DNA from: Vitrella brassicaformis CCMP3155
Taxonomy: Eukaryota; Protista; Chromerida
Reading direction: 5' to 3'
Length of the DNA stretch: 64,000 bases
Assembly: GCA_001179505.1 (NCBI GenBank)
Contig: CDMY01000262.1
Location: forward strand, 1 to 64,000
Both the position numbers and the translations under genes were made by a program. The notes beneath the pieces were generated by a model that made no database searches, was not told where the DNA came from, and worked only from the letters and a program-made list of their open reading frames with translations. Each line of letters opens with the position of its first letter. The first letter of the stretch is position 1. Below are positions 331 to 58,675 of the stretch, one piece after another.

Positions 331-1689
331 GTGCTGGTGTTGTATGGTTGGTGCTGACTTGAAAGACGTACGCAGACACTGACGTCAACTGTGTGCCTGG
401 ATCCGTGCGGTCATGCGTCAACGAATGAGCGAGCACACCACACTTCTGCCGACAATGCGAGGCGGTCGTCAGTTTGAATGCGTCCGTGAGTTGCTTTGGT
501 CTGGTCATTTCCTCACTCACACGCAGCAAGAGAGTCTGCATACTTCCACACACACACAAACATAAAGAAGAGATGACACCCACCCACACACCCACCCATT
601 CATCCATCCATCCTTTCATTCTATTTCATCAAGGCGATCAGCCACTTCACTCAATCAAACAGTCAGCCCCCCCTCACACCACAAACTCACACCTCTGTCC
701 CTCACCCCCTCACACCACTCCCTCACCCACTCACGTGGAAATGCCCTGTTGATGATGTCGTCCTCGACGTCGACGTTGAAGTGATTCAGCACGGCACGCC
801 AGCGGGACATCGATGTGGGGTAGCGGTCGGCAGGGCAAGGGGATACAGACACAACACCATGGGCATGCGAGCAGGTACTCTCATTGGTAGCTGTGTGTAT
901 GGGTTCTCACATGGTGTGGGTACCAATGGCGGAGAGGCTTGGCGACTGGCTCACGACCCTGCAGGCACCGCAAACGCACAGATGCATGCATTTGCTTCAG
1001 GGATTCAATGGTTCGGTTCTCGTCGACGTCCTACCCTGATAGACGCTCTTCTATCGCTCCAGAACGAGAAGAAGGAAAAGAATCTCTGCAGTGCATTCAT
1101 GCGTATGGCAGACGATCACACGTCGTGCCTTTTGCTCACCCGATGCCGTTCAGTGGTTCAGCGATGGGTCGCACCGGTCACACACAACAGGAAGCCTGCA
1201 ACCAATCCACAAGGATGCACAACGGAGGCGGAGGGGCTCATCGCCGCCATGCCTTGTGTGATGGTCGTGAGGGCGAAAGTGGCGGCCGAGATGCTGCTGG
1301 TGAGAGTGGACCAGTGAGAGGCAACAGACGGCACCTGATTCAGTCAGTGTACACAAAGGGGGATAGATGATGGATCATGGCGGCAGTGATGATGGGATAA
1401 CCTCTTTGACTTACAAGCGTCGCGTATCTCCTCAAAAGCATCTACTGGCCACCGATGGGCGACATCCACTCATAAACCTCTGCATCACCTCCTTCGTTCC
1501 ATGCTCACTATCGCCACTCACTATATCGATTCACCAAAAATGGCGATTCACTCAAGATATGAGCTGGTGCCAGCTCTATCCAGACCAGGGGGATGCATCC
1601 CCTTCTTCTTCCTCCTCTTCCGATCTGCGAGCTTACCTGCGAGCTTGTCTTTTTTTGCCTGCTGCTCATTTGAAAGAAAGAAAGCGACG

Positions 1690-4597
1690 ATGCCTTCTTT
1701 CGTATATGAGCAGCAGGTCGTCGCCTATGGAGCGGCACCAGCCCTCTTCCCACCGCAGCCCTTCCACCAGCATCAGCACCCGCAGCAACACCCCTTCTGC
1801 ATGTGGCCGACCCCTCCCCGAGTGCCCCTCAGGCCAATTGAGCGCCATCCCGCTCAAAAGCGGTGCAAACCGCCTGCACGGAAGCCGCCACGCACACAGC
1901 ACACACGTGGCGCCCCCTGGCGCACCCGCGTCAACCCGTACGTGTGTCCGCCTTGCCTTCGGGCTCGGCAGGACCCGTATGGCGCGACCGCGGCGCCCAC
2001 CGGCGCGCATGCGCCACCTGTCATGCCGGCCCCGCCGCACATGATGCAGCAGCACATCCGCCAGCCGCCTCCCATCGCTGCACTAGGTGCTTCGGCCGTG
2101 CATGCCCCTGGCTGGGGCTTCGTTCCGCCCGCCGCCGCCCTGGCGCCCAACCGTGCCCCACAGACAGCAGCAGCACCGCAGCGCTACGCCACCCGCGTCC
2201 GCCCCAACATCGCCGCCATCCCGAGGGCCATGCCAGCGGTGCCGGCTGCATCGAATGCCAGGGAGGGAGAGGGAAGGGAGAAGGATGAGGAGGAGAGGGA
2301 GGGAGAGGGGAGGGAGAGGGAAGGAGAGGAGGGGGAGAAGGACGGATGCCGCACCCCGCCAGCCATCAGTCACCAGCGGCAGGAGGACGGAGAGGAGAGA
2401 GAGAGGGGAGAGGACGAGGAGGAGGAAAGGGCAGAGAAGGCATCCCCCGAGCCGCCCTGTCAGCAGGAGGAGGAGGTGAAGGAGGAGCAAGAAGGCCGCA
2501 CCCCGCCAGCCACCACCCACCAGCAGCAGGAGGAGAGGGACGACGAGGGCAGGGAGGGAGATGTCCAGGAGAGGACCAGCCACACGAGCCAGCCGCCGGC
2601 AGCCTCTTCTACACCGGCAGCCCCAGCGTCACCCCCTCAGCAGGAGGACACAGAGGAGAGGGAGAGGGAGAGGGCAGAGCCTCAGGTTGACGAGGAGGAG
2701 GAGCGGGCCGAGGAGGCCGTTTCTGAGCCGCCACGAGAGGCCGAGCAGGGACCCAACGACGAGGCCGCACCTGCCGCAGCTGCTGCTGCCCCCAGCAGTG
2801 ACTTGCCTGTGGGCGAGAGTGACGAGACCGACCTGACTAGCGAAGGTACGCAAGGACGGATGCACAACAAGAAGGCGGACACAGTTTGACTTCATTCACT
2901 CACCCTCCTGTCTGTTGGTGTGATGTGTTGGTGCAGGTCTTATCGAGGCAGAGGCCGCTGCGCCCCCAGCCCCACTGCCACCCGCCGTGCCCGCCGCCCA
3001 ACCAGCCCACCACACCCGGCACGCTCGCCTTTCCGCCCACACCTTCGGGACAGACTATTGGTTCAATGAGAGAACCATCACATTGAAGGTGTGGGTGGAC
3101 GGGAAGGCGGGCTTGCTCAAGATGAGGACGCCAAGGGTCATCCTGGAGGCCATGAGGCTGGCGCGCCCCGACATCGACAGCCGAGTTGTCGACCGCATCG
3201 TCCACCGGGCCCTGATGGCGATCGAGGACGAGGCGCAGCTCCTCGATCGCCTGACGGGCCAACTGAGGGCACCGGCATTACTGTCGAGGGGTCACGTGGC
3301 GGAGGCGGACCCGATCAAGGTGCAGCTGCCCCCGCCCAACACCAGCACCCGGCAGGGCCTGACGGGTGACGAGAGGGTCACCATGGAGCTGGCTGGCCCC
3401 TTCTATACCGCAGAGCTGCTGCGTACGTGACAAGCACCCACACGATGCCATGAACTGCACGACGGATCTCATGCTCTTTGTGTGTGTGGGTGTGGTGCAG
3501 AGTACAAGGGGGAGGAGGCGCCGAACCTCACCCAGCTGACCATCGCCCGCGCCCGCATCACCGCCCTCCCCACCACACCCACCCCAGCGCAGCTCAAGGC
3601 CTTCGCCGCCGCCCCGGGCAAGGACCTCAGCGCCACCGTCATCAATGCCATCGCCGCCACCGAGCGCCACATCACCCAGGAGGGGCTTGTCAGCGCCCTC
3701 GAGGCCATCCACGACTTTGGCCAGCCCAAGAAGCTCGTGGAGGTGCCGCCAGGGGCCAGCGAGGAGGACCACCCGCCCACACGCCCTTACTCTCCCGCAC
3801 TCCACTGCGCCTTCAAGGACAACCAGCCCAATGTCGGCAGCTCGACCATGCTGCCGAGGATGTGGAGGGCGGAGGGAGGAGAGCTGCAGCTGATCCACGG
3901 CGACGCCCACGGGGGCAACCTCGTCATGGCTGGGGACGTGGGGAGGATGACGGCCTACCACATCGACCACGAGGCCACTCGGGAGGTCAACTACTCTGAT
4001 GTGGACGCCGTCACCAACCCACGTCTCGACGTCGTCAGCCCCCCACCCTACCGCCCCTACGTCTACCTGGCCGCCCGCGCCAAGAACGTCCCCTTTGCCC
4101 CGACCAGCAGCTACACTGACGTCTACGGCGTCACCATGAGTGTGGCTCTGTGTGCGCTGGCGGGGCACCGGGGGTTCTCCAAGCGCTTCCAGGGCTGGGG
4201 GATGGGCAAGCCCTGCGAGGTCGAGAGGCTCATCCCTGCGGACGAGAGGCTCATCCCTGTGGACGAGAGCCTCAACGCCGCCCTCCTCGAGACCATAGGG
4301 AAACAAGACGACACGGCACATGGGCGCTGCGGAGAGGAGGACAAGGGGCGATTCCCCAAAAAAGGCCGGAGGGCCATCGAGAGAGCCCACCGAAGGCTCT
4401 TCGGCGAGGTGTTGGGGGCCATCGAGGCTGAGGAGTGCGAGGTGGCCGGGGACCTGGTGGACCTCAGGATTGCGCTGGAGTGCCTGAAGACCATCCCTCA
4501 GCCACCCCAGCCCACCGAAGCCCCGCCACCCATCACCTTGGAGCCCCTCATCGCCACCCTCAAGCAGCTGATCGCAGATGCCTACCCCTCCGCCTAG
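1690..4597 (+). CDS. Divergent protein-kinase-like protein with long Pro/Gln- then Glu-rich N-terminus (kinase-like paralogue 1, intact, 912 aa)
   Basis: Exons 1690-2845, 2937-3422 and 3501-4597 splice in frame (both introns GT-AG, phase 1; 2739 nt = 913 codons; an alternative upstream start exists at 1501). Motifs: beta-strand Lys (GLLKMR), alphaC-like Glu (IEDEAQLL), catalytic loop LIHGDAHGGN (3896), IDHE (3962), alphaF-like YTDVYG. Confidence 0.75.
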
Positions 4598-4946
4598 GGA
4601 GGGGTGGCAACTGCCTAGCCGCCATCGCAGGGAGGGGGTGTGTGTGTGTGTGTGGACGGCGACCTGGGATGCGTCGACAATGAGGCAGACGCCGCCAGCA
4701 GCGCCCTCAGCAGCAAGAGCAACACCAACGTCCTGTCCACCACGCCTGTGGTGGTCCTGTCCACCAACGTCCTGTCCACATCCGCGTGTGCGTGGGCGTG
4801 TGTTTGCGGCTCAAGAGGGGGCGGGGGCGTGTGGGACGAGCTCAAGCCGGGCAGCAAAGGAGGAGGGGCGGACGGAGGGCGACCGTCGCAAGCAGGGGCC
4901 GCGCGACGGCGACCGTTGGGGCCGGAAGGCCAGCTCGGATGCCGAC

Positions 4947-5460
4947 ATGTACTCTGACGAGGGCGAGAGCGACTCGGTGTATGAGAATGGCGGTGGCGAG
5001 CCGCAGGGTCTGGACCTCGATGACCCCGACCTCTATCAAGACAGCGATGAGGACATGGAGCAAGACGATGACGTGGCGATCGAGGACGTGCCTGTCAAGA
5101 GGGGGCGGGGGCGGCCCAGGAAGGGCCAGAGGGGCGAGCGGGACGGTGAGTACAAGCCGGGCGACAAGGTCCAGGCAGCCAAGGGCAGCAAGAAGCGCCA
5201 GCGCAAGAGCGGCAAGGCTCTCGACGACGACATCGACCCGTCACTGCATCGGCTCAAGGACTTCATCAACAGGAGTGCGCGTGCCCAGCAGCAACAGAGA
5301 GGGCGGAAGGGCAGATGGACTTGCGGCGTCTCGCCTGACGGGGCGCCCGATGAGGACGACGTCGTGCCCCCGCTGGCGCCTCCGAAGGACTACGACCAGT
5401 CTGTGACGGACGGCAAGTCGGGTGCGTCGGACCACATCAGCGAGCCATGGGATCTGACTA
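4947..5460 (+). pseudogene. Acidic/basic low-complexity coding segment with an AT-hook (KRGRGRPRK); probably a gene fragment
   Basis: In-frame MYSDEGESDSVYENGGGEPQGLDLDDPDLYQDSDEDMEQDDDVAIEDVPVKRGRGRPRKGQ... with a canonical AT-hook core GRP; part is duplicated downstream with an in-frame TAG. Confidence 0.5.
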
Positions 5461-5676
5461 GCCGAGCAACCAGCAGCTGTAACAGAACACAGAGCAGTGG
5501 ACCAGCATCAGCATCTCGGTGTATGAGAATGGCGATGGCTAGTCGGAGGGTCTGGACCTCGATGACCCCGACCTCTATCAAGACAGCGATGAGGGCATGG
5601 AGCAAGACGATGACGTGGCGATCGAGGAGGTGCCGGTCAAGGGGGGGCGGGGGCGGCACAGGAAGGGCCAGAGGGG
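4974..5676 (+). repeat. Direct duplication of ~160 bp (4974-5134 and 5516-5676)
   Basis: Both copies begin tcggtgtatgagaatggcg and end ggaagggccagagggg; the second has ggc-TAG where the first has ggc-GAG. Confidence 0.9.
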
Positions 5677-5789
5677 TAGCTACAGACAGCCTGCACCAGA
5701 GATCTGAGCCATGGGACACCAGCCATGGGCGTGTCCACCTCATCCCAGCATCAGCATCATGCTGCGCGTGCCGCCACTGCCGCGTCTTC

Positions 5790-7793
5790 TGCAGAGGACG
5801 TCCGCAAGATCCGCGAGTACGACGAGCACCTGGTCGCCGTGGCGTTGAATGGAGGCTTCGGGAGGGATGCCACCGGCCTCACCGAGCTCATTGTCAAGCT
5901 CTTCAGCACTCCACGATTACCGGATGGACTTCATGAGCCCCTGATTGCCGAGATCGCGGAGGGCAAGGGCGAGGTGCATTTTGCTGTCCTGTGTCGAGTG
6001 TGGCGTAGCACGCCGACAGGGGCACAGCAAGATGGAGATCACCCTCGCCCACGACGCGCAGTCGTTGAAAAAAGGTGAGAGCGGAGGGAGGGAGGGAGGG
6101 ATGGACTGTGTGTGTCTGTGTGTCTGTCAGGTGTCTCGTTGTCGGTATGTGGTGGCCACTCTGCCGCTCGGCGTGCTGCAGGCCTCGCTCAAGTGCCACA
6201 TCAGACAACACCAAATCGACCAAAGCGACACACTCCAGAGAAGGTAGACACCCACCTCACCATGTGCTGCAATCTGCAGCCGTCGTGTCACGTCTTGTCA
6301 CTCCTCTCTGCATCTGTGTGTGTGTGTGTGTGTGTGTTTGTGTGCCAGTATGGTGAGGTTCGATCCCCCTCAGTCGGCGGCGAAGAGCTGGAGATACTCC
6401 GCTCAGCGGAGCTGGTCGTGCCGCGCATTATACGAGGCGAAGAGGATGAGTCTGACGGGTCTGACACCGACAGCGACTTCATCGACCTGCGCATCGACTT
6501 GGGCGTCATCGACCCTCGCAAGCACTTCTGGGCCTCGACCGTAACGGCATCGCGGCCGGTGCATGTGTCGTCGGTGCCGCCCAAGGCCCTGCCGGACGAC
6601 GGGTCATCGATGGACCCGTCAGGGCAAACAGGCGGCAGCCCCAGCCCGAGTCGATCCAGCTCCCCTCGGGTGCACGTCAGCCCTGTTCCCTCATCGCCCG
6701 AAGCATCGGTGACCCATTTGGAGAAGGGCCGCGACGCGACCAGAGAAGCGCTTTCCCAGGTGCACGGGCAGAAGGCAGTCGCTCAGGGCCATGTGGGTGA
6801 GGGAGGGGCAGCCGGCGTGGTCATCGAGGCCGTCGCCGAGCAGCATGTCGTCCAGGGCACGGCAGTTGTCGATCAGCCGTCCTTGTCGAGTTCATATGGT
6901 CGCAAAGCCTTCAAGAGCAAGCGGTCGCTCAAGCTGCACCAACTGGAAGGCCAAGAGAGCGGCCCGGTCGTCCAGGGAGATTCTGCACATCTCTCCACTT
7001 CCCGTTCCACTGCCGGCCAGTCACCTGTCCCGGTGGCGGTGTCCATGGAGGCAGAGGAGGGCGACCCGGGCAACGGCGCAAAGCTCGTGTGGGAGAAGGA
7101 AGGTATGAGACCTACACACACGCACACACATGGCATGGCGGAGGTCATCTCTCATCTCATGTCGTGCTCTCATGGATGGATGTCACGTGTGTGTGTGTGC
7201 AGGTGGTCGTCGGTTCGTGTGAGGCCGCGGGAGTGCCGTCTCCGCGCTGCAGATGCCGGGCCGCCGCATGCCAGCAATCCACCTGTGGGTCTTAGTCACT
7301 CGACGATTGACGGGCGAGGCCATCCGGCAGACCCGTTGGTCTCAGCAGCCCACACACGAAGGCCAGCTCTACTACGAGCGAGACACGACGCGTGTGCCGA
7401 GGCCTTACACGATAAGAGGCGTCAAGAAGGCCTTCCGCGAGGCGGCCGCATCCGATCACACACACTCGCCGGCACACCCACGCAGACGCACCCATTGCAA
7501 GCCAAGCAGCACCCACTGGTGCCGCTAGTTGGTGCCGCGAGTGCTGGTGCAGCAGCAGCAAACAAGGAGGATGGCGTGATGGTAGAGCTGGGGGCCAACT
7601 ACATCCACGGGTGTGGCGCTGGCCGTCAAGCAGGCCATAGGTTGGCCTGTGTGCTTGGACGGGAGGGCGTGAGCGAGCCGTGCGACACCGCCACCTTCAT
7701 GGATGCGGGCAGCGGGACGCGTGCGGACCCCGTCAAGGTGGCCGAGTGTGACCTGGTCTTCAGGGCAGTCGCGGAAGAGATCAAAGAGAGAGG
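5790..7793 (+). pseudogene. Scrambled fragments of a flavin-dependent amine oxidase (LSD1/polyamine-oxidase-like)
   Basis: Exon from 6131 reads VSRCRYVVATLPLGVLQAS (cf. the conserved 'VxxTxPLGVLK' motif). Segment ~7500-7793 reads PLVGAASAGAAAA...VMVELGANYIHGCG (cf. 'ELGAxWIHG'). The motifs are in reversed order and the LEARDRxGGR motif is missing. Confidence 0.55.
6377..6641 (+). repeat. Dispersed module C; inverted copy at 60409-60648
   Basis: Shared ...gacaccgacagcgacttcatcgacctgcgcatcgac...gtgtcgtcggtgccgcccaaggccctgcc...gggcaaacaggcggcagccc (DSDFIDLRID...VPPKALPDDGSSMDPSGQTGGSP). Confidence 0.9.
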
Positions 7794-54132: not shown

Positions 54133-56240
54133 TTAGGAGGGATAGGCCTGTGCGATGAGGGTCTCTACACAGTCGACGAGGGGCTGGAGCGATGCGTCGG
54201 GGGGCGGGTGGGCGAGTGGGGGGATGAAGGCAAGACACTCCCGTGCTATGAGCAAGTCCAGCAGCTCCTCCTTTGGCCCTCCGTGGCGGCTGATGGTGTC
54301 GTCGATGTCCGACAGCAGCTGCTGGTGCACCGCCGTGGCCTCGTCGAGGCCGTGCTGCAGGAAGTGCTGGGGCCCCGCCTGGGCCTGGGCCTCTAGAGAG
54401 CGGACAAGCCGCTCGTAGAGGGTGCCGCTGCCGATTTGCTGGTATGTGCCCCACCCTTGATGGCCGCGGCCCATGACGGGTGGCTGCCAGCGCCGCCATC
54501 CCCACGCTCATCGCCGTTGCATAGACGTCGCTGTACTGGCTTTTGGCCAGGTACTGGCGGCCGGCGGCGTGGGAGAGGTAGTAGCAGAGGGAGATGAAGG
54601 GATCTGGTGATGGGATGCTGAAGACGGGGTTGAGGGCCTTGTGAAAGTCTTCGCCCTTCTGCATCTCCCTCACCGCCTCGTGGTCGATGTGGACCACCTC
54701 CATGTGGCCCCTCGTGCCGACCACCAGCAGGTTGCTGGCATGAGCATCCCCATGGATCAGCCACCCCTGTCGCTCCTCGTCCCTCCTACACAGCCGCGGG
54801 ATGTTGGTGGACATGCCCACGTCGAGATAGCTGCGGCAGAAGAGCTCACGCAGAGGGGGCGAGTGGGGCTTGAGTGGGAGGCACTCCTGGCTCTCGTCGG
54901 CCTCCACAGGCACGGGCAGCGTCTTGGACTTCTGGAAGTCCCTCATGGCGGTGAGGGCGCGAGAAGGCCGCGATGGATGGCTGGGCGGCTGAAGACCTTG
55001 GCTTCTGAGTCGCAGCCGGGCAGGTCTTGTCGATGAAGGTCCCAACGATTATAAAATGTAGGCAGCGATGTCAGGTCTGCAGGCAGAGACAGATTGCCTG
55101 AATGCACACAAGCTATAGACATAGTGTGTCTGCTTGGTCTCTCACTCCTGGCTCTCGTCGGCCTCCACAGGCACGGGCAGCGTCTTGGACTTGTGGAAGT
55201 CCCTCATGGCGGTGAGGGCGCAGGAGGCCGCGGTGTATGGCTGGCCGGCTGCTGTGGTGGATCGAGTAAACGACCTCCGGTTTGATGGGCATGCCGGCGC
55301 CTGCCGTGCCGTATCCGTGTGGGGCGGGTGTGGTGGGGGTGATGGTGGTGCCTTCGGTGACCATGGCGTTGATGGCGGCCCGGGCGACGGCAAAGTGGTG
55401 CAGGTTGGGGGCACCGTGCCCGTCGAACTCTGCCAACACGGACACCAGAAACGACACTCTTCTCTGTGGCGATGCATGCCGATTGTCTTTGCGTCTCCTT
55501 ACCCATGACCTTTACCGCATAGTAGGGTCGACCGGTCGTCTCTCCCGCCCCCTCGACCTTCTGCCCTCTGTGCGTCCTCATGTTGGGGGTCGCCACTGTG
55601 ATGGCGACGGGCTCCTCCACGCCGACATAGCCGCGGGACAGCAGGGGGGCGCCCTCAGCTGTCCCTCCAGCCGGTGGAGCAGCTGGGCCTCGTCCTCGAT
55701 GCCCCTCAACGCCGCCCGCTCCGCCCTCTCGGCCTCCCTCTAAGCCTTCGCCCCTCTCGGCTGGGGCTGCCCCGACTGCCTCAGCAATTCCCGCAGCAGC
55801 GGCTTGGGCGTGCGCATCTTGATGATGCAGTCCTTGCCGTGCAGCGTGGCCCTCAGGGAGATGGTCCGGTCGTTGAGCCAGTAGTCGCTGGTGAGGGTGT
55901 GCTCCCCGAGGGCGACACGCTTGGACGCGCTGCTGCGAGGCTGGGCGGGAGTGCGGAGCAGACGCAGACAGCTCCTGGTCCTCGACAACAACTTCACCAA
56001 CACACACATCACACGCGCAGACAGAAAAGTGAATCAAGTCACATTTCTTCGCCCTCTTGTTGTCCATCCATCCATCCGTACCTTGGCTAGTCACGCTGGG
56101 CTCGTCACAGTCACCCACAGGCGACTCACTGGGCGCACCGGCGGCAGGGGCACTCTCGGCAGGTCTCTTCTCCTGCGTGGCGGCTCGACAACCGCCTCGT
56201 GGTCCCTCTCCTCCTCCTCCTCCGGCTGGCGGGTGTGCGT
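54133..56240 (-). pseudogene. Kinase-like paralogue 3, frameshifted and interrupted
   Basis: DYWLNDRTISL...CIIKMRTP, GIEDEAQLL, LIHGDAHASN, IDHE, YSDVY, ends AYPS*; same two intron positions as paralogue 1; several frame changes plus an inserted module with a ~100-bp flanking duplication. Confidence 0.8.
54983..55145 (-). repeat. ~160-bp intron-bearing module, copy 3
   Basis: gtgagag...48-nt intron...cattcag|gc(a/g)at...ggtcttcagccgccc on the minus strand; see also 56668-56818 and 58194-58356. Confidence 0.92.
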
Positions 56241-56667
56241 ACCGTTACCCACGACTCATTCACCGCAGCTCCGTCGCAGGCACTCATTCACGACTCACTC
56301 ACCCGTTACGGGCGACAGGGGTGCTGCTTTGGGCTGTTGGTGTGTCCGATAGGGGCGGGGAGAGAGAACAGCCAGCTCTGGTGTCTCTCGCTGGCGTGGT
56401 CTGTCTTCTGTCTGGCTGTCTTCTTATCTACAGAGGTGTCAATACAGTATCTGAACACACATAGACACACACACACACACGTCACACAGACATACGGCAA
56501 CGAGGGAGTATATGCCGTCCTCACCTCCTGAGAGTGTGTGGGGTATGTGTGCTGTAGTGAGTCAGTCGCTGCCGCCCGCTGCCGTGCGTGCCCTGGCCTC
56601 CTGTCGTCGCCGCTCCCTCTCATCCTCTTCCACACGCTGATTGAGCCGGCGTTGTTGAAGTAGTTAC

Positions 56668-56818
56668 GGGCGGCTGAAGACCTTCCAGCCGGACAGGTCT
56701 TGTCGATGAAGGTCCCGGCGGATATAAAATGTAGGCAGCGATGTCAGGTCTGCAGACAGAGACACATCGCCTGAATGCACACAAGCTATAGACATAGTGT
56801 GTCTGCTAGGTCTCTCAC
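56668..56818 (-). repeat. ~160-bp intron-bearing module, copy 2 (12 nt shorter)
   Basis: Same sequence; immediately followed by a kinase-family scrap NYFNNAGSISVW (~56630-56667). Confidence 0.92.
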
Positions 56819-56878: not shown

Positions 56879-58600
56879 TCAGGAGGAGTAGGGGGTGGCT
56901 GCGATGATCTCCTCTACGGCAGTGATCAGGATGTCGAGCGGTGACTCTGCGGGGGGCTGGGCGAGGGGAGGGATGGACAGGAGGCACTGCCACGCGATCT
57001 TGAGGTCCGTCACCTCGTCGGCTGGGCCTTCCTGGGCCTCCTGCTCCTCGATGGATTTGATGATGTCGGCGACGAGGGCGTTGTGGGCGTCGGTCACCTC
57101 AGCCAGCCCCGTCTCCTGGAACTGCAGCCGCCTCTCCGTGCCCGCCTTGCCCTTGGACGCCCGTAGGTGGCCGCCGCGAAGTCGGATGAGGCGGTCGAAT
57201 AAGGAACCGCTCTGTCCGCCTCCCTGACAGCGCCCCCAACCCATGAACGCCCCCGCCCACGCCGGATTCCCCGCCAGCGCCGCCAAGGCCACCGTCAGGA
57301 TGACCCCGTAGTGGTCGGTGTACTGGCTGTCGGCTAGGGTCATCCTGTTGGCGGCCTCGTTGAGGTCATAGCTGACTGGCACAAACGGCACGGGGGAATG
57401 GACCTCCAGGGGCGGGTTGGTGTCCTGGTGGAAAGGCCGGTCCTGCTGCAGCTCCCTGCTGGTCTCGTGGTCGATGTGGGCCACGTCCCCCTCCTCCTTG
57501 CTGCCGACCATCAGCAAATTGCCGCCGTGGGCATCGCCGTGAATGAGGGAAACCTGCCCCTGCCCGCTCCTCCAGATGGACGGCAGGTTGGAGAAGCCTC
57601 CCACCACCATCGAGTCCGGCACGTGGCAGTTCTGCAGCTCCCATGAGTATGGCACAGCGCTCGGGCAGCCGTCGGGTGGTGCGCCTTGTGGTGGTGGTGG
57701 TGGCAACGGGTGTAGGGTCTTGAGGCTGCCGAAGTGCCGCATGGTGGTGAGAGCGGCGAGCAGGCCCTGGTGGATGGTGCGGCGGGGTGTGCTGGCGATG
57801 GATGTCAGCAGGGATGGCGTCATGGGCAGGCCGAAGTCCAGCTGGAAGGGGAGCAGCGCTGTGCGGGGGTCCAGCTGGTTGGTCCTCTGGTGGTTGGCGG
57901 CAGCGTGGAGGAGGGTCACCTGGGTGAGGTTGGGGGCGTCCTCGCCATCAAACTCTGCATAACCACACAAATGGACACCCACAATACATGTATGCTGCTG
58001 CCTTTTCTGCTGGTGTTCGGCTGCTGGCTTACTCATGACTTCGACGGCATAGTATGGACCCTTCAGCTTCACCTCGACGAAGTGCTGGGCCGTCACGCCC
58101 TCGGCACCCCTCCGATTGGCCATGTCGGCCGGCGGCAGCCGCAGCTTGAAGGGCGTGCTCCTGCGGACGAAGCCCCTCGACAGGAGCCGATATGGGCGGC
58201 TGAAGACCTTGGCTTCTGAGTCGCAGCCGGGCAAGTCATGTCGATGAAGGTCCCGGCGGATATAAAATGTAGGCAGCGATGTCAGGTCTGCAGACAGAGA
58301 CACATCGCCTGAATGCACACAAGCTATAGACATAGTGTGTCTGCGTAGTCTCTCACTGACGGCACCTTCTCTCGATGTTCTTCTGTTCCTTCAATGCCCC
58401 GCATGCAGGCGACGTTGAATCGCTCCAGCCTGTTGTCGCAGAACTGGCCCATCTCCCGCAGCAGCAACTCAGGTATCCTGAACTTGACGATGCACCCCGT
58501 GCCGTGCAGTTTGGCCCGCACGCTGATGGAGCGGGCGTTGAAGTAATACGTGCTGGATGTCAGTCTCGTCAGATAAAAAATGTAGCCAACGATTGGTGGC
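56879..58600 (-). pseudogene. Kinase-like paralogue 2, lacking the N-terminal exon and frame-disrupted by the module
   Basis: YYFNARSISV...CIVKFRIP, MRGIE, then module, then LLSRG, GPYYAVEVM|intron, LIHGDAHGGN, IDHE, YTDHYG, TPYSS*. The N-lobe and the rest are in different frames, and each GT-AG splice I tested within the module leaves them out of frame. Confidence 0.78.
58194..58356 (-). repeat. ~160-bp intron-bearing module, copy 1
   Basis: Same sequence, sitting between the alphaC-like helix and LLSRG of paralogue 2. Confidence 0.92.
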
Positions 58601-58675
58601 CTGCACGGAATACAAGACACCACACCAGCAGCCGGCCTGTACAAGATACTGGTAGCGCAATGATGGTCAGATCAA

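What the first reader, a model, noticed from the sequence alone, without database searches (positions are those of the whole stretch)
1690..4597. Candidate undescribed atypical kinase family (HGDAHGGN / IDHE), intact copy here and three relatives at 54-58.6 kb
Seen: an in-frame 3-exon gene with a beta-strand Lys (LLKMR / IIKMR / IVKFR in the three copies), an alphaC-like Glu, a long insert, catalytic loop HGDAH(G/A)(G/S)N, IDHE, a conserved NP..SP.P(F/Y)..Y segment, YxD(V/H)Y, and a shared C-terminal helical end (YPS/YSS*). Both intron positions are conserved between paralogues 1 and 3, and intron 2 in all three. Established: HxDxxxxN plus a D-containing Mg-binding motif define the protein-kinase-like fold. 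HGDxHxxN with IDxE is typical of APH/choline-kinase-like enzymes, while a DVY-type alphaF is ePK-like; no Gly-rich loop is evident. Inference: a lineage-expanded kinase family that fits neither class well, preceded by a large disordered Pro/Gln/Glu region and with no obvious signal peptide (unlike ROPK/FIKK). I do not recognise it as a named family.
Basis: partly seen in the sequence, partly recalled or inferred. Interest (0 to 1): 0.75.

Follow-up and report, generated by a model that had tools for sequence, protein, structure and literature searches.

The report
Orphan divergent kinase family in Vitrella
The gene is real and encodes a very divergent protein-kinase-fold enzyme belonging to a small, fast-evolving and mostly decaying gene family found only in the alga Vitrella brassicaformis; it is a new kinase family but has no demonstrated function.

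Summary
The three-exon gene at 1690-4597 (+) is real. Its junctions give exactly the public 912-residue record CEL98062.1 of Vitrella brassicaformis, named only "uncharacterized protein".

A profile search of 1.84 billion proteins found 12 hits. Eight were traced to V. brassicaformis, three to unnamed environmental contigs, and one is a weak insect EcKL kinase.

The genome holds about 12 loci at 30-45% identity, and most are broken. Only two gene-length relatives lie at 54-58.6 kb. One is a pseudogene; the other has a 154-nt insert in helix C.

Catalytic residues are invariant despite synonymous changes. The 5' flank and the first 190 codons are much younger (dS about 0.2, against about 1 in the kinase domain) and are shared with other kinase-like genes.

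Verdict: a new, lineage-restricted kinase family, probably active. Moderate interest.

The parts
822..977 (+). Upstream 156-nt block, 94% identical to the stretch upstream of the C236 paralogue. Possibly a regulatory element or a conversion patch; it is not known whether it belongs to the gene.
   Evidence: blastn; own-genome search finds only these two copies; no Rfam match.
1551..1689 (+). 5' flank / 5'UTR that is co-conserved with exon 1 in paralogous loci.
   Evidence: Continuous blastn alignments 1551-2426 to L014 (85%) and L016 (76%).
1690..2259 (+). Exon 1, first part: conserved Pro/Ala-rich basic N-terminal module (aa 1-190). Predicted disordered. Shared with about 10 loci, including genes that carry other kinase-like domains.
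   Evidence: dS is 0.21-0.24 here, against 0.8-1.4 in the kinase exons. pLDDT is about 30.
2260..2845 (+). Exon 1, second part: acidic Glu/Arg/Pro low-complexity linker (aa 191-385).
   Evidence: Sequence; pLDDT below 50.
2846..2936 (+). Intron 1 (91 nt, GT..AG, phase 1).
   Evidence: The junction matches P0013. About 72% identical to the corresponding intron of copy A and of the C236 copy.
2937..3422 (+). Exon 2: kinase N-lobe. It contains strands beta1-beta3 with K447 (codon 3119-3121), helix C with E482-D483-E484 (3224-3232), and beta4-beta5. There is no Gly-rich loop (YWFNERT; R431 is invariant).
   Evidence: Alignment A2; model secondary structure.
3423..3500 (+). Intron 2 (78 nt, GT..AG, phase 1), located at the hinge. 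The position is conserved in the paralogues.
3501..4597 (+). Exon 3: kinase C-lobe and stop codon. Catalytic loop HGDAHGGN at 3896-3919, IDHE at 3962-3973, helix F YTDVY at 4112-4126, then the C-terminal helices.
   Evidence: Pfam APH E 3.2e-5; alignment A1; model and fold search.
56879..58644 (-). Paralogue B. The C-lobe reading frame is open with all motifs present. The N-lobe is interrupted in helix C by a 154-nt local repeat (58195-58348), which could only be removed as an extra intron. There is no N-terminal module. No matching protein record was found.
54133..56262 (-). Paralogue A, a pseudogene. It keeps only the tail of exon 1. It has a TAG in exon 2, several frameshifts, and a copy of the 154-nt repeat (54984-55133) flanked by an exon duplication of about 95 nt.
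   Evidence: Only a 247-aa fragment is annotated (P0003, CEL98078.1).
56620..56810 (-). Third copy of the 154-nt repeat, followed by a degenerate N-lobe-like fragment (..NYFNNAGSISVW..).

Best explanation
The gene encodes a 912-residue cytosolic protein made of three parts. The first is a conserved but disordered Pro-rich/basic N-terminal module (aa 1-190). The second is an acidic disordered linker. The third is a very divergent kinase domain of the eukaryotic-protein-kinase (ePK) fold (aa 412-912). The domain keeps the core phosphotransfer residues: a beta3 lysine (K447), helix-C glutamates (E482/E484), a catalytic Asp with a metal-binding Asn in HGDAHGGN (D682, N687), the metal-binding Asp of IDHE (D703), and the helix-F Asp (D754). 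It lacks the Gly-rich loop, the DFG and APE motifs and the HRDLK lysine, and it carries an insert of about 100 residues before the catalytic loop. I infer that the window copy is an active ATP-dependent phosphotransferase, most likely a protein kinase because the model has the substrate-binding G-H-I helices of ePKs. It belongs to a family of about 12 loci seen only in Vitrella brassicaformis and a close environmental relative. The family evolves by tandem duplication, fast divergence and frequent gene death. The promoter-proximal flank, exon 1 and intron 1 have been homogenised or swapped recently between loci, probably by gene conversion or recombination around intron 1. The fold, the family limits and the evolutionary pattern are shown here. 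Catalytic activity, the substrate class and expression are inferred.
Against: The structure is a prediction from only 13 paralogous rows. No model coordinates were available, so the K447-Glu pairing and the active-site geometry were not checked. There is no Gly-rich loop. In the HGDMH subfamily the beta3 Lys is Arg (P0001, P0006), a change that inactivates classical kinases. Most loci are broken. The only close paralogue pairs give dN/dS of about 1.2-1.5, though at least one of those copies (C179) is a pseudogene. Deep comparisons give 0.3-0.9 with saturated dS. By sequence the only family match is APH, not Pkinase.
Confidence: 0.6

Rival explanations
1. The protein is a pseudokinase, or the family is largely functionless. 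It would keep the kinase fold as a scaffold or decoy, or simply be a young family drifting towards loss, without phosphotransfer activity.
For: Most of the roughly 12 loci carry stops or frameshifts. dN/dS is about 1.2-1.5 among the close C362/C263/C179 copies. There is no Gly-rich loop, DFG or APE. One subfamily has Lys-to-Arg at beta3. No annotated protein was found for copy B.
Against: The window copy is fully open and has every catalytic residue. The motif residues are invariant over a divergence at which synonymous sites are saturated, with synonymous codon differences at those positions. Deep dN/dS is below 1. Kinases without a Gly-rich loop can still be active (from memory: the Toxoplasma WNG kinases).
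Confidence: 0.25
2. The protein is an APH / choline-kinase-like small-molecule kinase (an ELK) rather than a protein kinase. It would phosphorylate a metabolite or an antibiotic-like compound.
For: The only Pfam hit is APH PF01636, at E 3.2e-5 and 24.3 bits for exon 3. The only hit outside the Vitrella lineage in the large search is an insect EcKL protein at E 2e-5. The weak PDB profile hits at the catalytic loop include MTR kinase, YihE and UbiB/ABC1. HGDxHxxN with IDxE is an ELK-style motif pair.
Against: The APH match covers only profile positions 79-189 of 239 and falls below the cut-off on the full protein (19.5 against 23.2 bits). All 50 listed structural matches are ePKs, and the alignments span almost the full target domains (290 of 298 residues of the TGF-beta receptor kinase). 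The helix-F motif TDVYG is ePK-like.
Confidence: 0.1

Closest known systems
Eukaryotic protein kinases of the TKL type (TGF-beta/activin receptor kinases, IRAK, plant receptor-like kinases, RIPK)
   Different: There is no Pfam Pkinase or PK_Tyr_Ser-Thr hit at E <= 1 and no sequence match to any solved kinase. It has no GxGxxG loop. It has HGDAHGGN where ePKs have HRDLKxxN, and IDHE where they have DFG. It has no APE. An insert of about 100 residues lies between helix D and the catalytic loop. Other ePK groups score only 2-4 Z units lower, so assignment to the TKL group is not established.
APH / choline kinase / EcKL phosphotransferases (Pfam PF01636, PF01633, PF02958)
   Same: The Brenner-type HGDxHxxN loop followed by (I/V)DxE. 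A borderline PF01636 hit. A mayfly EcKL protein is the only hit outside the Vitrella lineage (E 2e-5).
   Different: The match is limited to the catalytic-loop region. The full-length score is below the gathering threshold. The predicted C-lobe is ePK-like. There is no EcKL or Choline_kinase hit.
UbiB/ABC1 and Kdo/YihE-type atypical kinases
   Same: The catalytic-loop wording HGDAHPGN / HGDxHxGN. Weak profile hits to 5yjz, 7cy2 and 1zyl (E 0.4-0.5).
   Different: The E-values are not significant. No other region aligns, and the downstream motif differs.
Lineage-specific kinase expansions of apicomplexans (FIKK, ROPK, WNG); comparison from memory
   Same: A divergent, fast-evolving, multi-copy kinase family confined to one alveolate lineage, with many degenerate members. 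WNG kinases also lack the Gly-rich loop. ROP2 appears among the Foldseek matches at rank 26.
   Different: There is no signal peptide or export motif at the N-terminus (by eye). No sequence relationship was detected. The organism is a free-living alga. I did not test homology to these families specifically.

Membership tests
Eukaryotic protein kinase (Pfam PF00069 / PF07714) | Scores at or above the Pfam gathering threshold | tested here: not met
   No Pkinase hit at E <= 1 for the separate exons or at E <= 0.1 for P0013.
Eukaryotic protein kinase (Pfam PF00069 / PF07714) | Bilobal fold with helix F and the G-H-I helical subdomain | tested here: met
Eukaryotic protein kinase (Pfam PF00069 / PF07714) | Gly-rich loop GxGxxG between beta1 and beta2 | tested here: not met
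   The turn reads F-N-E-R-T and no copy has a glycine there. N and R are conserved instead.
Eukaryotic protein kinase (Pfam PF00069 / PF07714) | beta3 Lys and helix-C Glu | tested here: inconclusive
   K447 lies in the third strand and E482/E484 in the long helix. The position is Arg in two paralogues. The salt bridge could not be checked because no coordinates were available.
Eukaryotic protein kinase (Pfam PF00069 / PF07714) | HRDxxxxN catalytic loop, DFG and APE | tested here: not met
   The loop is HGDAHGGN, which keeps H, D and N. IDHE replaces DFG and keeps only the D. There is no APE.
Eukaryotic protein kinase (Pfam PF00069 / PF07714) | Conserved Asp in helix F (DxWxxG) | tested here: met
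   Y/S-T/S-D-x-Y-G lies at the start of helix 752-768 and is conserved in all copies.
APH phosphotransferase family (PF01636) | Scores at or above the Pfam gathering threshold (23.2 bits) | tested here: inconclusive
   Exon 3 alone scores 24.3 bits and full-length P0013 scores 19.5 bits. The paralogues score 14.6-16.5 bits or nothing.
APH phosphotransferase family (PF01636) | Brenner motif HxDxxxxN plus a downstream Asp | tested here: met
   HGDAHGGN and IDHE are invariant across copies.
APH phosphotransferase family (PF01636) | ELK-type C-lobe without the ePK G-H-I subdomain | tested here: not met
   The predicted C-lobe aligns end to end with ePK domains, and no APH or ChoK chain is among the 50 listed matches.
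EcKL (PF02958) | Pfam hit | tested here: not met
   No PF02958 hit for any family member. The relation rests on one profile hit at E 2e-5.

The most novel reading that the evidence does not exclude
The locus may be part of a cassette system. A recently homogenised promoter + exon 1 + intron 1 unit encodes a conserved disordered N-terminal module. This unit is recombined onto a set of hypervariable kinase-like bodies of at least three types: HGDAHGGN/IDHE, HDDLHGDN/IDYE and PGDANPNN/IDFE. In this reading one common regulatory or targeting leader drives a diversifying set of kinases or pseudokinases, as in arms-race families such as immune decoys or effector kinases, but in a free-living chromerid alga.
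Probability: 0.15. Interest if true: 0.7.

Novelty: new variant of a known kind. Interest (0 to 1): 0.42.

Why it matters
Chromerids are the closest photosynthetic relatives of apicomplexan parasites, whose own lineage-specific kinase expansions (FIKK, ROPK, WNG) are central to their biology. This is an ePK-fold family that standard kinase profiles cannot detect. It combines ELK-style catalytic motifs with an ePK body, and its loci are born and die quickly. It is therefore a useful case for how new kinase families arise, and for how far the catalytic core can drift while keeping Lys/Asp/Asn/Asp. It also shows that kinome counts for chromerids based on Pfam miss whole families. Practical importance is limited until activity and expression are shown.

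Tried and rejected
- The word-index search with exon 3 alone found nothing. Candidates are limited to 200-637 aa, and even paralogues in that range were not retrieved, so this blank says nothing.
- phmmer and profile searches against PDB sequences gave no significant hit. The best E-values were 0.2-0.8, at the catalytic loop only.
- NCBIfam gave nothing useful.
Two JGI metagenome scans, with exon 3 and with the environmental fragment P0009, found no relative. No orthologous DNA was therefore available for dN/dS on the window copy.
I could not look for transcript-derived contigs or fetch the ENA contigs.
- A viral origin was considered, because the ESM feature neighbours include virus clusters. 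BFVD matches are ordinary giant-virus Ser/Thr kinases at E-values similar to the PDB ePK matches, and the gene has spliceosomal introns. There is no support for a viral origin.
- The 154-nt repeat was tested as a mobile element. There are only three local copies and three weak partial hits in the genome, so it is a local rearrangement product, not a transposon family.
- The upstream 156-nt block was tested as an RNA gene. There is no Rfam match.
- A zinc site in the N-terminal module was considered. The four Cys are replaced in the C256 copy and the region is predicted disordered, so I rejected it.
- Literature searches for a chromerid kinome analysis or for the accession numbers found nothing on this family.
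All searches with my own model were run exon by exon, by reference. The full-length sequence that I folded is the public record P0013 returned.

Full report
ORGANISM AND GENE MODEL. The window is contig C262 of a genome of 72,700,666 bases in 1064 contigs. These are exactly the figures published for Vitrella brassicaformis CCMP3155 (PMC4501334). The proteins recovered carry that organism's name. Reading the sequence gives exon 1 at 1690-2845, a 91-nt GT..AG intron, exon 2 at 2937-3422, a 78-nt GT..AG intron, and exon 3 at 3501-4597. Both introns are phase 1. The public record P0013 (CEL98062.1 / A0A0G4EM91, 912 aa, "uncharacterized protein") was returned by a search with a paralogue.

THE OBSERVATION. 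tblastn of the exons against the window finds two gene-length relatives on the minus strand, not three.

Copy A (54,133-56,262) is a pseudogene. It keeps only the tail of exon 1. It has a TAG in exon 2 and several frameshifts. It also has a duplication of about 95 nt of exon sequence flanking an inserted 154-nt repeat.

Copy B (56,879-58,644) has an open C-lobe frame with all motifs. However, the same 154-nt repeat lies inside helix C, where the otherwise invariant EDE reads EGTEE, and there is no N-terminal exon. A GT..AG pair in the right phase could remove most of the repeat as an extra intron, but that is only an inference.

A third copy of the repeat, followed by a degenerate N-lobe-like fragment, lies between copies A and B at about 56.62-56.81 kb. 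Intron 2 is at the same phase-1 position in all three copies. Intron 1 is shared, with recognisable sequence, by the window copy and copy A.

SEQUENCE-LEVEL IDENTITY. Pfam gives one hit: APH (PF01636) on exon 3, at E 3.2e-5 and 24.3 bits against a cut-off of 23.2, covering profile positions 79-189 of 239. On the full protein the score drops to 19.5 bits, and on the paralogues to 14.6-16.5 bits or nothing. NCBIfam gives nothing. No solved structure matches the single sequence or the family profiles. The best E-values are 0.2-0.8, all at the catalytic loop, to MSK1, UbiB/ABC1, YihE and MTR kinase.

A profile of the C-lobe exon from the paralogues (A1) was searched against 1.84 billion representative proteins and found 12 proteins at E <= 1e-3. 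Eight of these are V. brassicaformis "unnamed protein products". Three short fragments (P0008-P0010) come from ENA metagenome contigs and are 83-90% identical to family members, which points to an environmental Vitrella relative. The twelfth is a four-domain EcKL protein of a mayfly, at E 2e-5. Two JGI metagenome scans found nothing. At HMMER sensitivity the family is therefore confined to the Vitrella lineage. I found no paper that mentions it.

FOLD. AlphaFold2 on P0013 with 13 paralogous rows (A3) leaves aa 1-411 unstructured, with pLDDT about 30. It folds aa 412-912 with pLDDT mostly 70-95. The order of elements is three N-terminal strands (K447 in the third), a long helix carrying EDE, further strands, a hinge at the intron-2 position, helices, a poorly modelled loop of about 45 residues, a strand leading into HGDAHGGN, two strands leading into IDHE, and then six helices beginning at YTDVYG.

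By predicted fold this is therefore a complete ePK domain including the G-H-I helices. It is not an APH-type enzyme. The lead of the TKL-type kinases over other ePK groups is only 2-4 Z units, so I do not assign a group.

THE FAMILY. A six-frame search of the genome finds about 12 loci at 30-42% identity. Their states are as follows:
- The window copy is intact.
- The C262 copy at 70.8 kb has one in-frame TGA before the catalytic loop and is annotated as two genes.
- The C236 copy has an intact kinase domain, a TAG in the N-terminal module, and Arg at beta3.
- The C258 copy has a frameshift inside HGD..N, and the annotated protein skips the catalytic loop.
- The C69 copy has two TGA and has lost HGD.
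- The C179 copy has two TGA and a frameshift.
- The C362 (two loci) and C263 copies are partial or lack a detectable N-lobe.
- C91 has only fragments.
- Copies A and B are as described above.

Two subfamilies are visible. One has HGDAH(G/A)(G/S)N with Lys at beta3. The other has HGDMH(A/P)(A/D)N with Arg at beta3. UniProt labels one fragment (CEL98105.1) "protein kinase domain-containing". The others are labelled "uncharacterized".

SELECTION. H, G, D and N of the catalytic loop and D, H and E of IDHE are invariant in 8 of 8 copies that keep the region. The EDE of helix C is invariant in 7 of 7. The codons at these positions differ synonymously. In the same alignments overall identity is 30-45% and synonymous sites are saturated: pS is 0.49-0.63, and dN/dS is 0.3-0.9 by Nei-Gojobori. 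This argues for long-term purifying selection on the catalytic core. The only close pairs (C362, C263, C179; 86-90% identical) give dN/dS of 1.2-1.5 from few substitutions, and at least one of these copies is a pseudogene. It could not be tested for the window copy, because no orthologous DNA was obtainable.

THE N-TERMINAL CASSETTE. The first 190 residues are not just low-complexity sequence. They are 55-85% identical to about 10 loci. The nucleotide homology runs on into 139 nt of 5' flank. dS in this block is 0.21-0.24, against 0.8-1.4 in the kinase exons of the same gene pairs. Homology to the C236 copy and to copy A resumes at the end of exon 1 and across intron 1 (72% identity), and stops within 13 nt of the start of exon 2.

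The same module heads genes with other atypical kinase-like domains. P0014 (CEM02824.1) has HDDLHGDN...IIDYE and scores 26.7 bits on Pkinase, below the cut-off. P0015 (CEM34416.1) has PGDANPNN...IDFE. Both align to this family only around the catalytic loop. Other family members (P0002, P0006, P0007) have unrelated N-termini. The simplest reading is that the 5' part (flank, exon 1, intron 1) has been homogenised or exchanged recently among loci by gene conversion or recombination, while the kinase bodies are old and divergent. This is an inference from the divergence pattern and was not formally tested. The module is predicted disordered, and its cysteines are not conserved in the C256 copy, so a zinc site is unlikely.

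MECHANISM. I think it most likely (about 0.6) that the window copy is an active ATP-dependent phosphotransferase. It would use K447 and a helix-C Glu to position ATP, D682 as the catalytic base, and N687 and D703 for metal binding. The invariant Asn and Arg of the beta1-beta2 turn would stand in for the missing Gly-rich loop. It would act on proteins, because the predicted C-lobe is of the ePK type. None of this has been shown experimentally. The main rival (about 0.25) is a pseudokinase or a functionless decaying family. A small-molecule ELK-type kinase is less likely (about 0.1).

CLASSIFICATION. This is a new, lineage-restricted family within the protein-kinase-like superfamily. It has an ePK-type predicted fold and ELK-style catalytic motifs, so I rate it a new variant of a known kind. 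Interest is moderate. It is an undescribed kinase family in the sister lineage of Apicomplexa with an unusual mosaic evolutionary pattern. However, it is confined to one genus, most loci are broken, and there is no evidence yet of expression or function.

Noticed in passing
window 58195-58348 (-), 54984-55133 (-), 56686-56806 (-): A 154-nt repeat is present in three copies at 94-100% identity, all inside this small kinase array. Elsewhere in the genome there are only three weak partial hits. One copy sits in helix C of copy B. One sits in exon 3 of copy A, flanked by a duplication of about 95 nt of exon sequence. One lies 3' of copy B, next to an N-lobe-like fragment. It starts with GTGAGA and contains CTGCAG, so it may behave as an intron. 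Its origin is unknown.
   Followed up: partly
window 822-977 (+): A 156-nt block about 700 nt upstream of the ATG is 94% identical to C236:147412-147566, upstream of the paralogue there. That is more conserved than the coding DNA of the two genes. These are the only two copies in the genome, and there is no Rfam match.
   Followed up: partly
window 1551-2259 (+); loci L014-L022: The N-terminal module and its 5' flank are shared at 65-90% nucleotide identity with about 10 loci. These include genes with other atypical kinase-like domains (CEM02824.1, CEM34416.1). dS is about 0.2, against about 1 in the kinase exons.
   Followed up: partly
proteins P0008, P0009, P0010 (ENA metagenome contigs of 2-4 kb): These environmental fragments are 83-90% identical to family members. 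P0009 is 83% identical to the start of exon 3 of the window gene and includes translated intron tail. This suggests genomic DNA of a close Vitrella relative in a public metagenome. The DNA could not be fetched.
   Followed up: partly
G000:C258:107273-108305 (L006) and protein P0002 (CEL97903.1): The public gene model for this paralogue removes the whole catalytic loop (..VWTRDGGE|FVREM..), apparently to step over a frameshift inside HGD..N. The locus is probably a pseudogene or carries an assembly error.
   Followed up: partly
window 4578-5936 (+): The next open frame downstream is acidic and contains two near-identical internal repeats (..SDSVYENGGGEPQGLDLDDPDLYQDSDEDMEQDDD..) and an AT-hook-like RGRGRPRKG. 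It is unrelated to the kinase family.
   Followed up: no
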